A DNA stretch of 64,000 nucleotides from NCBI RefSeq assembly GCF_033153115.1, contig NW_026889778.1, positions 43,524,001 through 43,588,000 on the forward strand. The letters run 5' to 3'. A model generated the notes under the pieces. That model was not told the origin of the DNA, made no database searches, and worked only from the letters and a program-made list of their open reading frames with translations. Of the stretch, positions 18,001-25,523 are shown in pieces. The DNA comes from Saccostrea echinata (lineage: Eukaryota). Both the position numbers and the translations under genes were made by a program. The first letter of the stretch is position 1. Each line of letters opens with the position of its first letter.

Positions 18001-18840
18001 ATAAAGATAATATTACTAAAGCAATGGATTTGCTGATTATTTTTACTATTTTGTTTCCGGGTTATTCCATAGGTGGAATAGTCCCAATCTTAAACAAACT
18101 CCCATCCTGACGTTGTATGGATGCTTCAACCTGGTAAATGGGACATCCCTTCTTCATTCAGTCTGTTTTCCACCTAGCCTTTCTTTCAATATTACATTTA
18201 TTAATAACATACGTTACAAGGTAAGCGTTTTAAAAAAGCTTAGTAAGCCAACCAGTAGCATATTATTCCATGCTTTGTGATGAACAAGGGTTTCCTTTTA
18301 ATACAGTGACAAGAGTGTAGGCCAGTACCCGTAAAGGAACCCGTAGAGGAATGGGCTTCACTCCCGTAAGGTTCTAAGTAAAGAATCGACAAAAGGAAGA
18401 ATATTACATCATGATCTATGCTGGTTTTCATTTAAAAAAAAACCATGGTATAATAGAAGAAAAGAAAGGTCCTGAAATTGGTTCAAAGTAGAACTGTATT
18501 TTTACGATTTTAAAACTGTACATGAAGATGTATTTTAAACTCATTCATAATATATATAGTAAGACCATTATCGTAAGTGAGTTTCGTCCGGGAAGGGGGG
18601 GGGGGTATTAATATCTCATTTTGCTCTAGCTACAAAGTGTACAGGCCATTACTTTGCATCGTAGAGCAGCATTGAAGCATTTTCGTCTCAATTACTTCAA
18701 GACAACTTTCCTAAGGGCTGCGCTCCATTGACTGTTCGGAACACTCCGAACATGTGCAAAGTCAATGGAGTACAAAAGTGCACTGTTCTCGGACTGTTCT
18801 TTCTGTCCATGTGCGAGAGGTAGTGCAGTCAGAATTCAAG

Positions 18841-20609
18841 ATGGCGACAAATTCACAAAACAGAGCGACACTCTTTGAATGCGACAGTTGTCATCGTCTT
18901 TTTAAAAATATGGAAGAATTTGTTTGCCATGCATGTGATGATCCAGGTATATATAAACTTATTGCATATAATTTTTGTTCGGTTAACTAAAGTACTAAAG
19001 TTATTCTAATAGATAGTTTTCAGTAGGCCCAAATTAGGAAGAGTTATTTCCCGTTGACCGCCATATTGGAGGTCAACATGGTCACATTCCTGCGACAATT
19101 GGCAACATTTAATGCGGATTCCTCAATTTTTAAAATTATTTATACATTATTAATATTTTATTATCATTTTTTTATTACTTTTTTGGCTGAATTATGGTTA
19201 TGTATGGATTATATATAAGGCAAATGTATTTAAATTCAGTAGACATTTTGTCTGGGTCAGTGACTGGCATTCGCAACGGCTACGCTCAATCGTGATGTCT
19301 CAAACCCCCTTTCTACTTTATTGGCGTCGGAAGCAAAGGGGGAGGCTAACCCCCCCACCCCACCCCCCCACCCCCCCAAAAAACGTTTTGGGGCCAAGCC
19401 CCAATTTCCAATGCCTAGTATATTAGCCACCGAAGCTCCCTCCCCCCCCCCCAGTTCTGACGCCTATGTACTCTTCTAAGGTAGTAAGTACTTAGTGACT
19501 ATAAGGTATTACATGTTTAAGATTTTTAACCCCCAGTTACTAATTAAAACTGTTAAAGAGAGTATCAAGATAGTAAACCTTTATAAAAAAATGTTGCCAC
19601 TTCTATGGTATTGCAGTTGGTCATGAAAAGCTGATAAACATGCAATTGTAATGTAATACATTAAAGATTAAGGTATTATGCCCATGAGCCTGTAAGTGTA
19701 CACATTGCGTAGGAATTTGGATGTAAGTAAAAATGCCACATTTCTATGGAACATTTGCATGTATAATTTATGAAAGGACTGTTAAAAGAAATTTTTATCA
19801 GGATTGGGCAATGTAACATACCTCCAATATAAATGGTATTTAGTACCTCTTAATATAAATATTTTGTTTATTCATTAATTTTACACTTAACAAGTACTGG
19901 TGGCTATGATGGCAAAATTCTTCATCTGGAGGATGAAAGTCTGGATCTAGAAGGAGGAGATGGGAGACCCATAGAGCTGGCTCCTGACTCTGCTGTTCTT
20001 TGGACAAGACCAGCCACACTTCTCCTTATTGACCAGTATAAAAAGAACTGATCACAAGTGGAAAATTAAGAAAAAAGGCACTATGGAACAAAATTGCAGC
20101 AACTCTTAAACAAAAAGAAAAATGTAATTTCAGTGCAGCTCAAGTGGAAGGGAGATGGAAAACTTTGATGCGAGGATTAAAAAATGTTAAAAGACCACAC
20201 CAAAAAAAGTGGGACAGAAAGAAGTCACCCATATGAGGATGACATAGAATTTATGTCAGCAAAGCCTAACGTTCAACCAGAATGTGTTATTGGGACAAAA
20301 TCCAGCGCGGAAACCAAGTCGAGCACAGAAACCAAGTCGAGCACGGACACCAAGAGCACAGAGGAGAGCGACACAGGTAGGCCTGACACTCCTACAACTT
20401 CTACTAAGAGAAAATGTGTGTCTCCTGAAAAAAATCAAAGTTCAAAAAGGCGTCGCACAAATGATGTAGTAGAAAGCTTGGAGCAAATCATGAAGAATGA
20501 GAATCAGCGTTTTGAAGAACAAGTGGAAAGGAGACACCGTGAAAAAATGGAAATGTTTGGAATTTTTTTTTGGAAATTCTACAATCAAGCCAAAAAAAAA
20601 AAAAAATAA
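18841..20609 (+). pseudogene. Harbinger accessory Myb/SANT (trihelix) protein with N-terminal zinc finger; frameshifted
   Basis: Exon 1 (18841-18946) reads MATNSQNRATLFECDSCHRLFKNMEEFVCHAC with donor CAG|GTAT. Exon 2 (from ~19895) reads LWTRPATLLLIDQYK...KKALWNKIAATLKQKEKCNFSAAQVEGRWKTLMRGLKNVK/DHTKKSG...HPYEDDIE, then an S/T-rich linker, NLS-like KRRR and a coiled coil. Confidence 0.85.
19322..19468. mobile_element. Small MITE with G/C tracts in the Myb gene intron
   Basis: Inverted ends GGCGTCGGAA...TTCTGACGCC. Confidence 0.5.
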
Positions 20610-23204: not shown

Positions 23205-25523
23205 AGTCCGTGTTCTGTCTGCACCATTCATCTTGCGCGAGAATTTGTCTGGGACGTGTCTCGAACAGGTCAATGGAGCGCGACCTTAGTTAAAACTGTT
23301 CGCAATTTGTCGTACAGAACGATGGAGAATACACCAATCTATAAATAAAGGCCGTCTCATCAATCTGTCACTGACCAGAGAGTGTGCATGAAGAAGCGAC
23401 CCCTCTGATAAGAGAGTATGACTTTCTTTAGAACGACTCGTTCTAACTATTTTTCCCAGAATTCCAATCTACGCAAGCGAACTTGCAGTTTCCTCCCAAC
23501 TAACTAGTCAGCCCGTGGGCTAACTAATAAATGACCTAACAGTGGCACGTCTTAGAATTCGTTAATTTGTAATATTTGGTTATGACAAGAGAAAGTCAAT
23601 TGTACATTTTGTATAATGAAGTATTGCAACTTTGTCGCTCCTTGATGACGGAAACGTTTAGCACTTCTCTTGCTTATACGTTCCATAGATATTGATTGAT
23701 TTAGTCAGGCAAGCTTTTTGAAAAGCTATTACCTATAATGCTTTTAAATATGCATTTGTATCACATCACACAACTATCTCGTCCCTGGTTTATGCCCTCG
23801 GATTGTGTCGGCACGCGCCATAGCCGATATCAACCTCACGGCCTGATACCAGGACGGAGATCAAAACAGCTGTATGATATTCTAAAATTTTTTCTTAAGA
23901 GTCATACTATATATCCACTAGGACAAATGTTTCATATCTTATATACAATCAGAAAGTGGTTTTTTACCAGAGGTTCATCTTTAATGAAAAATTGACGAGA
24001 AAATATGCATGTTAAAGTAAACACACCGTCTTTTGAGTTACATATTACATATTTAAGTTATATATATATACCTGAGGTATATAGTATATATTTAACACAT
24101 CATCAAAGTTAGGTGATGTCAAAAGACGTAACATTGTTGGTGTGAAAAATAGAAATTATGTGATCTGAGAGAAAGATAAACTCACGTCAAATGAATCTTT
24201 TTTCTTACAAAGATATTCTATGTGGAAATAATTGGTTATTATGTAATTGATCAAAGAAGAACCTTACGTACAATGTATAAAAATATACTGAAGACTTTTC
24301 TAGAGCTGTAATAAAAGAAACAACATGACCTAGAAGCGGGGGGCAGGGGGACGTCCATCCCCCCACCCCGCCAATAATCTAGCCGATATACACTATTCTA
24401 TAGTTAACAGAGCTACTTTATGCTCGTGGACTCTCAATAATAGCATCCATTGAGCATTTTCTTTCTACGGGCCTGAACAAAGAGAATTCATTAATATCAC
24501 CCGCATACGGTGTTTACTTCTCCCAACTTATTAGATACTCAAGAGCATGCTCTGACTACGATAATTTTTTTTTAACCGAGGGTGGCAACTGGCAGATAAG
24601 TTGATATTGCAAGGATTTAAACAACCTCGTTTAAAGACAGCATTTCATATACATGACAAATTCAATGGTCATTATAATATCCTTGTAAGTATAGTTAATC
24701 TAGCCCTCTGGACGTAGAAATAAAACATGTTACTGAAAACTATAATAAAGCAATCTTTATACGGTGTTTTAACCATTGTGAATTTGTTACACCGTTTTTG
24801 TAGTTCTACTCATTGGCTTTAAGAATAGCTAGTCTTTCTCGAAGACACCAAACATTTCAAAACACCCGTACAAAGCATGAGACTGAAATATTAAAAATGA
24901 TAAAATATCTAATTTTTCAACATACATGGGGAACTATTTTCTGTTTTAGATTTAAATGTCATAACAACATGTGCCATCATTGAATGTGTGTTAATGATTG
25001 AGTGTCAAAAAAATGCGTTAATGACTGAGTGTAAACAAATGCTGCATTTGTGTATAAAAAGTAGGTGATTAAAAGCAAACAAGGAAAGTTCTTTAATATT
25101 TGAAAATCTTTTGAAATGATTTCAATATTTTCTACGGGAGAAAGGTATAATTATATTATACACATTTATTAATAGTATCTGTGTGATTAACAAAGTAAAT
25201 GTAGAGAGAAATAATCTATTCTTTTCTGTTTTGAAGAAGAATTATTTACTTTTACTTTTTATTTCATGTATTTGCTTGTTGTTTGTACCTAAATTAAGAA
25301 ATCACAAGTTAAGAAATCTATTTACAATTGTAAAGACTGTTTTTTTTTTAACTATTTCGCAACTGATAGGTATATTAACTTCGTAATAATGTATTTGTAA
25401 CGTTTTGATAAACTCTTTTCAGAGGCGTTCAAAAAATATATATGCAAAAATATAAAACATATGCTCTTGAAATTTCTAACACAGAATTTATAAAATTTCA
25501 CAGATATTTTCTGGTATTATTGT

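What the first reader, a model, noticed from the sequence alone, without database searches (positions are those of the whole stretch)
18715..23286. Harbinger transposon whose accessory gene carries a zinc finger, a Myb/SANT domain and an IAP-type RING (putative E3 ligase) exon
Seen: inside the TIRs, downstream of the Myb/SANT exon on the same strand, 20728-20892 encodes CKIC...ILPCGHLIACLKCA...CPICRKQI...KVF with all eight RING ligand positions. The ORF track misses it because of a 1-nt slip in an A-run. Known: PIF/Harbinger elements normally encode a DDE transposase plus a Myb/SANT protein, and this RING spacing with a C-terminal aromatic tail is typical of IAP/MYLIP/RNF34-type E3 ligases. 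Inference: this family may deliver a ubiquitin ligase to its own DNA ends through the Myb domain, for example to modify chromatin, counter silencing or turn over the transposase.
Basis: partly seen in the sequence, partly recalled or inferred. Interest (0 to 1): 0.9.

Follow-up and report, generated by a model that had tools for sequence, protein, structure and literature searches.

The report
Oyster Harbinger transposon with RING exon
A decayed copy of an oyster "Harbinger" jumping gene whose DNA-binding helper gene ends in an optional exon for a ubiquitin-ligase (RING) domain; the exon is kept across several related transposon families and bivalve species, so these mobile elements probably carry their own ubiquitin-tagging module, which no paper I found reports for this transposon class.

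Summary
Window 18715-23286 is a PIF/Harbinger DNA transposon with TIRs, a 3-bp TSD, a broken DDE_Tnp_4 transposase on the minus strand, and a zinc-finger + Myb/SANT accessory gene on the plus strand. Window 20728-20892 is an IAP-type RING exon (Pfam zf-C3HC4_3, 8e-13) broken by one extra base in an A-run.

The RING is not a one-off capture. It is present in all 4 genomic copies of this family. It also lies in the same convergent position in two other Harbinger families of this genome (Saccostrea echinata, inferred from a 100% protein match); their transposases are about 45% identical to this one. One of those families has at least 12 near-identical copies, several with an open transposase exon.

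RefSeq models in Magallana gigas and M. angulata (244 aa, "isoform X2") join zinc finger, Myb and RING at exactly the donor predicted here (window 20376 to 20728). The RING therefore replaces the NLS/coiled-coil tail by alternative splicing. Tegillarca models also carry Myb + RING.

A further family has an F-box exon in the same slot and splice phase.

E3 activity and its target are untested. No paper on RING-bearing Harbingers was found.

The parts
18712..18714 (.). left target-site duplication (TAA)
   Evidence: The right side reads TTA, one mismatch. Copy C14 has a perfect CAA/CAA.
18715..18771 (+). left terminal inverted repeat and a subterminal inverted copy of its core (CTCCATTGAC at 18724-18733, GTCAATGGAG at 18761-18770)
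18841..18946 (+). accessory gene exon 1: start codon and C2HC-type zinc finger (FECDSCHRLFKNMEEFVCHAC). Phase-1 donor, GT at 18947-18948.
   Evidence: 83% identical to residues 1-36 of M. gigas P0281.
18947..19893 (+). intron 1, holding an unrelated high-copy 84-bp repeat at 19008-19091. The acceptor AG is mutated to AA at 19892-19893 in this copy.
19894..20376 (+). accessory gene exon 2, the part common to both isoforms: Myb/SANT-like (trihelix) DNA-binding domain and Ser/Thr/Glu-rich linker. Several frameshifts in this copy. It ends at the internal phase-1 donor ACAG|GTAGGC, which is conserved in all 4 copies.
20377..20609 (+). read-through tail of exon 2 (canonical isoform): NLS-like KRK...KRRR and a helical/coiled-coil end (...REKMEMFGNFLEILKSSQKK*), as in other Harbinger Myb-like proteins. 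The RING isoform skips it.
   Evidence: Homologous tails in families C, D and E.
20590..20665 (+). A-rich/(TAAA)n tract with the stop of the canonical ORF and seven AATAAA motifs; candidate proximal polyadenylation site
20728..20892 (+). alternative terminal exon: IAP-type C3HC4 RING with C-terminal ...KVFKC tail. Phase-1 acceptor tttcctttctag| . One extra A in the run 20756-20761 breaks the frame in this copy.
21164..21169 (+). AATAAA downstream of the RING stop; candidate distal polyadenylation signal
21258..22316 (-). DDE_Tnp_4 transposase main exon, convergent to the accessory gene. Read in three frames (two frameshifts), with a 30-nt tandem duplication near the 3' end.
   Evidence: 84% identical to Saccostrea cucullata P0035.
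23073..23273 (-). possible first exon or 5' region of the transposase gene. An open frame with no family match; the assignment is uncertain.
23241..23286 (-). right terminal inverted repeat
   Evidence: Homology to the other copies stops here.
23287..23289 (.). right target-site duplication (TTA)

Best explanation
SHOWN. This is an old, inactivated copy of a low-copy PIF/Harbinger transposon (here called family A). Its accessory gene has three coding blocks: a zinc-finger exon, a Myb/SANT exon, and a downstream terminal exon that encodes an IAP-type RING.

The Myb exon can be read through to its own stop, which gives the canonical zinc finger-Myb-NLS/coiled-coil helper protein. Alternatively it can be spliced from an internal phase-1 donor (window 20376) to the phase-1 acceptor of the RING exon (20728). 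That gives a protein of about 245 aa with zinc finger, Myb and RING, which lacks the NLS/coiled-coil tail. Natural intact proteins with exactly this junction are annotated in Magallana gigas and M. angulata.

The RING exon is an old, maintained component of a bivalve Harbinger clade. It is present in three families in this genome, in Magallana models and in Tegillarca models.

INFERRED. The RING isoform keeps the DNA-binding part that, in studied Harbingers, binds the element's ends. It would therefore tether an E2-recruiting RING to the transposon's own DNA or to the transposase complex. There it could ubiquitinate the transposase (turnover, disassembly or dosage control) or nearby chromatin or silencing factors.

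Another family carries an F-box exon in the same slot and splice phase. This suggests that what is selected is recruitment of the ubiquitin system as such.
For: Transposon identity:
- TIRs and TSD.
- Four copies whose homology stops at the TIRs.
- DDE_Tnp_4 and Myb domains.

The RING is real and family-wide:
- Pfam hits above the gathering score.
- Present in all four copies and in one frame in two of them.

The RING is old:
- Families B and C have transposases about 45% identical to this one, yet carry a RING exon in the same convergent place. All ligands and the ...KVF tail are kept.
- For 11 family B copies the RING lies 1.3-1.8 kb from the transposase match, for 9 of them at 1644-1658 nt; a twelfth lies 7.2 kb away.
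- No non-coding DNA similarity between families was detected (one search found only the 4 copies of family A).
- The three RING families fall in one transposase clade with support 85/86.

The RING exon cannot be translated on its own:
- There is no in-frame start before the first Cys pair.
- A and B both have a polypyrimidine-AG phase-1 acceptor two codons before the first Cys.

Splicing:
- The donor ACAG|GTAGGC is conserved in all 4 copies and is phase 1.
- M. gigas XP_034307601.1 and two M. angulata loci read ...KEESDS|DECKICMEDGK...KVFKC. This is the same junction, and the protein maps exon by exon to 18841-18946, 19894-20376 and 20728-20889.
- Tegillarca granosa models hold Myb + RING.

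F-box parallel:
- In family E, an F-box exon (Pfam 9.6e-9) follows the Myb-coiled-coil stop, again with a phase-1 acceptor. It is seen in two copies.

Known role of the Myb-like protein: it binds the TIRs, binds the transposase and imports it (Sinzelle et al. 2008, as summarised in PMC9392472).
Against: - No RNA evidence was obtained. No RNA run was listed, and the support behind the RefSeq models cannot be seen here.
- A search with the family B RING against 1.84 billion representatives found no Myb-RING protein among the best 150. Family B's accessory gene is therefore not documented as a protein.
- The closest Myb relative, family D, has no RING. Its transcript-like products end in the coiled coil, so the RING is dispensable for at least some relatives.
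- The four copies here evolve neutrally.
- The genomic context of the Magallana genes is unknown, so they could be domesticated genes.
- E3 activity, dimerisation, substrates and DNA binding are all untested.
Confidence: 0.62

Rival explanations
1. Passive cargo. The last exon of a host IAP-like gene, with its acceptor and 3' UTR, was captured once between the two Harbinger genes. It is carried along without any role in the element's life cycle, and gene predictors merely stitch it to the Myb exon.
For: - Bivalve genomes hold very many IAP-type RING exons. One search lists dozens of RING matches that are not near transposases.
- Family D lacks the exon.
- The copies of family A drift neutrally.
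- No RNA evidence was obtained.
Against: - Neutral cargo would not keep an open frame, all eight ligands, the functional C-terminal tail and a phase-1 acceptor while the transposases diverged to about 45% identity and the non-coding DNA became unalignable.
- The exon reads open in every family B copy found (57-59 aa open frames).
- The donor and acceptor phases match.
Confidence: 0.12
2. Recurrent independent capture. The slot downstream of the Myb gene is a hot spot. Families A, B and C each picked up a RING exon separately, and family E picked up an F-box, from host genes.
For: - The slot holds different modules: RING, F-box or nothing.
- The RINGs of A, B and C are only 41-53% identical to each other. 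The family B RING is as similar (up to 60%) to unrelated database RINGs as it is to the family C RING.
- A 50-residue domain cannot resolve its own phylogeny.
Against: - The acceptor sits at the same position and phase relative to the first Cys in A and B.
- The three RING families form one transposase clade.
- Tegillarca also has the RING.
- Even if this reading were true, repeated capture of ubiquitin-ligase modules would itself argue for selection on that function.
Confidence: 0.1
3. Host domestication or a repressor. The Myb-RING protein is, or has become, a host gene, or a self-limiting isoform. It binds Harbinger ends and marks the transposase for degradation, so it restrains transposition rather than promoting it.
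For: - Harbinger Myb-like and transposase genes are domesticated repeatedly (PMC9392472, PMC9710019).
- The RING isoform loses the NLS/coiled-coil tail, as expected for a competitor of the canonical helper.
- The Magallana proteins are annotated as ordinary genes.
Against: - In this genome the exon lies inside TIR-bounded, TSD-flanked mobile copies, and inside a young multi-copy family.
- M. angulata has two loci with near-identical proteins, which looks like a mobile family.
- Self-limitation by an element-encoded isoform is a variant of the main explanation, not a true alternative to it.
Confidence: 0.12

Closest known systems
Canonical PIF/Harbinger elements (for example Harbinger3_DR, Ping/Pong): DDE transposase plus Myb/SANT-like helper
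   Same: - Two convergent genes, a DDE_Tnp_4 transposase, a trihelix Myb-like helper with a C-terminal helical tail, TIRs and a 3-bp TSD.
- In studied elements the helper binds the ends, binds the transposase and imports it (PMC9392472).
   Different: Here the helper gene has an N-terminal C2HC zinc finger and an alternative terminal exon encoding an IAP-type RING. In a further family the alternative exon encodes an F-box. No paper describing this was found.
RAG1 and Chapaev/Transib-type transposases with an N-terminal RING
   Same: A DNA-transposon-encoded protein that carries a RING. The RAG1 RING is an active E3 that autoubiquitylates (references 19 and 20 in PMC4411706).
   Different: - In RAG1/Chapaev the RING is fused to the transposase itself and belongs to a different RING subtype.
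- Here it sits on the DNA-binding accessory protein, is of the IAP/zf-C3HC4_3 subtype, is C-terminal and is optional by splicing.
- PMC4411706 states that RING fingers were not known in any other transposable element.
IAP-family RINGs (cIAP1/2, XIAP) and other zf-C3HC4_3 ligases (MGRN1, MDM2/MDM4, MUL1, MYLIP)
   Same: Best sequence matches among solved structures, E 6e-10 to 1e-8. They share the same ligand spacing and the C-terminal hydrophobic/aromatic tail ending a few residues after ...V-x-F.
   Different: No BIR domains or any other IAP part. Only the RING module is shared, so this is not an IAP.
Virus-encoded ubiquitin-system hijackers (herpesvirus ICP0 RING; polerovirus P0 and poxvirus F-box-like proteins). 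From general knowledge, not tested here.
   Same: A genetic parasite that encodes its own RING or F-box module to redirect host ubiquitination. ICP0 acts at the parasite's own genome against silencing.
   Different: Those are viral proteins unrelated in sequence. Here the module is tethered to a transposon-specific Myb DNA-binding domain. No target is known.

Membership tests
PIF/Harbinger DNA transposon | DDE_Tnp_4 (PIF/Harbinger-type) transposase | tested here: met
   PF13359 scores 3.9e-14 and 1.3e-15 on two frames. 84-89% identical to Saccostrea cucullata 'HARBI1'-named proteins.
PIF/Harbinger DNA transposon | second gene encoding a Myb/SANT-like (trihelix) DNA-binding protein | tested here: met
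   PF13837 scores 9.8e-6 on the broken window piece (26.3 bits against a cut-off of 27). The intact M. gigas orthologue P0281 carries PF13837 and matches the GT-1 trihelix structure.
PIF/Harbinger DNA transposon | terminal inverted repeats and a 3-bp target-site duplication | tested here: met
   About 45-nt imperfect TIRs with a 13-nt perfect core. TSD is CAA/CAA in copy C14 and TAA/TTA (one mismatch) in the window.
PIF/Harbinger DNA transposon | dispersed copies whose similarity ends at the TIRs | tested here: met
   Four copies on contigs C29, C14, C8 and C16, 86-92% identical. No similarity in the 300-nt flanks.
IAP-type RING E3 module (Pfam zf-C3HC4_3) | C3HC4 ligand set with the subtype's spacing, scoring above the Pfam gathering score | tested here: met
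   48.4 bits (window piece), 51.3 (C14), 45.7 (family B) and 47.4 (family C), against a cut-off of 27. Ligands are aligned.
IAP-type RING E3 module (Pfam zf-C3HC4_3) | C-terminal tail with a conserved hydrophobic/aromatic residue close to the stop | tested here: met
   ...IKVFKC* (A)...VKVFFT* (B) and ...IKVFM* (C) align to ...VRTF of cIAP1/2. This was tested by sequence only.
IAP-type RING E3 module (Pfam zf-C3HC4_3) | E2-dependent ubiquitin transfer and RING dimerisation | not testable with these tools
No complex prediction was run.
IAP (BIRC) protein family | at least one BIR domain | tested here: not met
   No BIR hit in any exon or in the precomputed domains of P0281, P0278 and P0279. Not an IAP.
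RAG1/Chapaev-type RING transposase | RING fused to the transposase polypeptide | tested here: not met
   The RING is on the opposite strand from the transposase and is spliced to the Myb gene.
F-box (SCF adaptor) module, family E noticed in passing | F-box motif above the Pfam gathering score, plus a substrate-binding repeat domain | tested here: inconclusive
   F-box-like PF12937 scores 9.6e-9 and F-box PF00646 scores 7.8e-8, both above their cut-offs. The following region looks LRR-like by eye but had no Pfam hit, and only a weak PDB hit to an LRR protein at E 0.008.

The most novel reading that the evidence does not exclude
A clade of bivalve Harbinger transposons encodes its own DNA-tethered ubiquitin-ligase modules. 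These are interchangeable alternative terminal exons, either an IAP-type RING or an F-box with a repeat domain, spliced onto the element-specific zinc finger-Myb DNA-binding protein. The element can therefore switch between a transposase-recruiting helper and an E3 that acts at its own ends, for example against host silencing factors or for transposase turnover. This would be a transposon counterpart of viral ICP0-, P0- or Vif-type hijacking of ubiquitination.
Probability: 0.4. Interest if true: 0.85.

Novelty: new variant of a known kind. Interest (0 to 1): 0.72.

Why it matters
Cut-and-paste transposons are thought to carry little beyond a transposase and, in Harbingers, a DNA-binding helper. 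An element-encoded E3 module fused by splicing to the end-binding domain would give a direct handle on two questions: how DNA transposons regulate their own transposase, and how they fight host silencing. It would parallel the only other transposon RING known, that of RAG1, whose role in V(D)J recombination is still debated.

It is also practically testable. Intact natural proteins exist in Magallana, so nothing needs to be repaired. For genome annotation, it explains a set of "uncharacterized" Myb-RING genes in oysters and clams.

Tried and rejected
- RNA evidence: the look-up of sequencing runs listed no RNA run.
Later genome-search runs gave coordinates only.
- Search with the family B RING against 1.84 billion representatives: 1952 RING proteins, none of the best 150 with a Harbinger-type Myb region. 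This is uninformative rather than negative.
- Search with the family D helper ORF: only 6 relatives, all without a RING.
- ESM Atlas: holds P0281 letter for letter but gave no usable neighbour.
- Within-genome selection test: RING and flanks are equally diverged, with 12 nonsynonymous against 4 synonymous variant codons and a pairwise dN/dS of about 0.4 on 8 differences. This is consistent with neutral decay of dead copies and has no power.
- Segmental duplication as the source of the 4 copies: rejected, because similarity ends at the TIRs.
- A donor at the very end of the Myb ORF: rejected, because there is no GT in the A-rich tract in any copy and the ORF stops there.
- RING translated as its own small gene: rejected, because there is no in-frame start before the first Cys pair.
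Broken pieces were searched apart, and the natural M. gigas protein was used instead.

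
Full report
**What is at the coordinates.** Window 18715-23286 is bounded by imperfect inverted repeats of about 45 nt with a perfect 13-nt core (GCGCTCCATTGAC). It is flanked by TAA on the left and TTA on the right.

On the minus strand, 21258-22316 encodes a DDE_Tnp_4 transposase read in three frames (PF13359 3.9e-14 and 1.3e-15). 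On the plus strand there are three coding blocks:
- 18841-18946: start codon and a C2HC-type zinc finger.
- 19894 to about 20609: a Myb/SANT-like trihelix domain (PF13837 9.8e-6 on a broken piece), a Ser/Thr/Glu-rich linker, an NLS-like KRK...KRRR and a helical tail.
- 20728-20892: the RING.

The RING reads DECKICMEDGK in one frame and (K)IAESVILPCGHLIACLKCASSLTGNKCPICRKQINKSIKVFKC* in the next. The break is one extra base in the A-run 20756-20761. The window piece scores 8.4e-13 on Pfam zf-C3HC4_3, above the gathering score.

**The genome and the family.** The window is G000:C29:43524001-43588000 of a 923-Mb assembly. A related transposase ORF from the same genome is 100% identical to "putative nuclease HARBI1 [Saccostrea echinata]". 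I therefore take the genome to be that rock oyster.

The element (family A) has four copies, on C29, C14, C8 and C16, 86-92% identical. Similarity ends at the TIRs and the flanks differ. Copy C14 has a perfect 3-bp duplication, CAA/CAA. So the copies arose by transposition, not segmental duplication.

All four copies carry frameshifts or stops in the Myb exon. C8 has a 2.4-kb TIR-bearing insertion inside the RING exon and a Cys-to-Trp change in a ligand. C16 is 5'-truncated with insertions. The family is dead in this genome. Close intact transposase relatives (84-89%) exist in Saccostrea cucullata.

**Is the RING a one-off?** No.
- It is present in all four copies at 93-96% identity, and it reads in one frame with all eight ligands in C14 and C16.
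- Two other Harbinger families in the same genome, whose transposases are only about 45% identical to family A, carry an IAP-type RING exon in the same place, convergent to the 3' end of the transposase.
- Family C (locus L064) shows the end of a Myb-protein ORF with its stop (...MKESTKK*). About 260 nt later comes a RING exon (ECVICMD...CGHLVTCLEC...CPLCR...KVFM*), followed by an intact 365-aa transposase on the other strand.
- Family B has at least 12 copies. For 11 of them the RING lies 1.3-1.8 kb from the transposase match, and for 9 at 1644-1658 nt; the twelfth lies 7.2 kb away. All are in convergent orientation. Five of the nine family B loci inspected have an intact 346-aa transposase exon.
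- Both RINGs pass the Pfam gathering score.
- No non-coding DNA similarity links the families: the DNA search with the whole element found only the four A copies plus an unrelated 84-bp repeat.

Retention of the open frame, the eight ligands and the ...KVF tail is therefore evidence of long-term purifying selection. In a transposase tree, A, B and C fall in one clade (support 85/86) together with Mytilus, Pecten and M. angulata proteins. This is consistent with one old acquisition.

**How the exon is used.** In families A, C and E the Myb ORF ends with its own stop after a conserved helical tail. In A the stop lies in an A-rich/(TAAA)n tract that contains AATAAA motifs and no GT.

The RING exon has no in-frame start before its first Cys pair. 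In both A and B it begins two codons before that pair, after a polypyrimidine tract and AG, in phase 1.

Upstream, the sequence ACAG|GTAGGC (exon end at 20376) is conserved in all four copies and is also phase 1. Splicing 20376 to 20728 would give ...EESDT-D-ECKICMEDGK....

The test came from public proteins. A search with the Myb domain of a related helper protein returned XP_034307601.1, "uncharacterized protein LOC105327532 isoform X2" of Magallana gigas. It is 244 aa and has Pfam Myb_DNA-bind_4 plus zf-C3HC4_3. Near-identical isoform X2 proteins come from two M. angulata loci.

Its sequence reads ...KEESDS|DECKICMEDGKIAETVFVPCGH...KVFKC. It maps exon by exon onto the window at 18841-18946 (83%), 19894-20376 (broken) and 20728-20889. 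The predicted junction is thus exactly the annotated one.

Tegillarca granosa (an ark clam) has models with two zinc fingers, Myb, the helical tail and the first half of a RING. This shows that the exon lies downstream of the helper gene there too.

Caveat: these are computed gene models, and I could not see their transcript support. No RNA run was listed for this element.

**What the RING is.** By sequence it is closest to the RINGs of cIAP2, cIAP1, MGRN1 and XIAP (E 6e-10 to 1e-8). It shares their spacing and their C-terminal ...V-x-F tail. There is no BIR domain, so it is an IAP-type RING module and not an IAP. The Myb part matches the plant GT-1 trihelix structure.

**A parallel in the same slot.** Family E has two copies (L046/L066 and L047), and its transposase falls outside the RING clade. 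It has the same layout: a Myb ORF ending ...EKMEIFSGFLSVLKSMKD*, followed about 230 nt later by a long pyrimidine tract, AG and a phase-1 exon.

That exon encodes an F-box (LCDLPPEIICKILTYIPIPELY...; Pfam F-box-like 9.6e-9). It is followed by a region that looks LRR-like but is not confirmed. Family D, whose helper is the closest to A (34%), has neither module. Its transcript-like products end in the helical tail.

So the slot is variable. In two different forms it holds a ubiquitin-ligase module.

**Mechanism.**

Shown:
- The gene anatomy.
- The conservation of the RING exon.
- The matching splice phases.
- The existence of natural proteins with zinc finger, Myb and RING.

From the literature: the Harbinger Myb-like protein binds the TIRs, binds the transposase and imports it into the nucleus, and both genes are needed for transposition (Sinzelle et al. 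2008, as summarised in PMC9392472).

Inferred: the RING isoform keeps the DNA-binding half and swaps the NLS/helical tail for an E2-recruiting RING. It would bring ubiquitination to the element's own ends or to the transposase complex. Candidate targets are the transposase (turnover, dosage control or complex disassembly) and chromatin or silencing proteins. Whether the effect promotes or restrains transposition cannot be told from sequence.

**Selection within this genome.** Among the four A copies the RING exon and its flanks are equally diverged (3-7% against 2-7%). Variant codons are 12 nonsynonymous to 4 synonymous. This is the expected neutral decay after insertion. It is uninformative about the ancestral element.

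**Novelty.** Four full-text searches found no paper describing a Harbinger with a RING or an F-box. A bivalve TE survey does not mention it. The "harbingerTRIM" preprint concerns TRIM genes next to a Harbinger, not inside one. Kapitonov and Koonin (2015) state that RING fingers are not encoded in any transposable element other than the Chapaev/RAG1 lineage. Repbase and Dfam could not be consulted. I rate this a new variant of a known kind.

**Limits.**
Pieces were searched by reference, and the natural M. gigas protein served for the joined form.
- The N runs at 5892-6063 and 6737-6883 were left untouched.

Noticed in passing
L047:1324-2818 (G000 C32:5086856-5088350); L046 and L066 (C66:752364-758071): A different Harbinger family (E) carries an F-box exon downstream of its Myb/coiled-coil ORF, on the same strand and convergent to an intact 319-aa transposase. 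The exon scores Pfam F-box-like 9.6e-9, has a phase-1 acceptor after a long T-run, and is followed by an LRR-like region. It is seen in two copies; in L046 the first half of the F-box is deleted.
   Followed up: partly
G000 C41:629796-632226, C15:7020083-7022505, C19, C27, C5, C12, C33, C7, C56, C18, C62 (loci L054-L065): Family B Harbinger: at least 12 near-identical copies. Five of the nine loci inspected have an open 346-aa transposase exon, and one is 100% identical to a RefSeq S. echinata 'HARBI1' protein. Each has a RING exon that reads open, at 1.3-1.8 kb from the transposase match in 11 copies and at 7.2 kb in one. This looks like a young family. Its Myb exon could not be fetched.
   Followed up: partly
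window 19008-19091: An 84-bp high-copy repeat nested in intron 1 of the accessory gene. The first look found 547 candidate places for the whole-element query, and the 33 scored outside family A all match this repeat at 91-95% identity. It is unrelated to the Harbinger and is probably a SINE or MITE fragment.
   Followed up: no
L037:3470-5837 (G000 C8, inside the RING exon of that copy): A 2.4-kb insertion with its own inverted ends (GGACTTGGTTGCTCAAAAC ... GTTTTGAGCAACCCAGTCC) splits the RING exon of copy C8. It is another DNA transposon nested in this one.
   Followed up: no
window 21385-21444: A 30-nt tandem duplication in the 3' part of the transposase ORF. It duplicates ...CCIIHN(I/T)CIL... 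and is absent from the S. cucullata relative P0035.
   Followed up: no
proteins P0285 (K1RC34) and P0286-P0293: An older M. gigas model joins the same donor (after ...KEESDS) to exons of a protein with an HFHLDR motif, TatD-like by eye. Logan contigs encode that part alone (166-177 aa). Either a chimeric model or a third use of the donor.
   Followed up: no
window 18724-18770: The left end holds the TIR core and an inverted copy of it 28 nt further in (CTCCATTGAC ... GTCAATGGAG), forming a potential hairpin or a pair of binding sites. The right end has a single copy.
   Followed up: partly
window 5892-6063 and 6737-6883: Two runs of N (172 and 147 bases).
   Followed up: no
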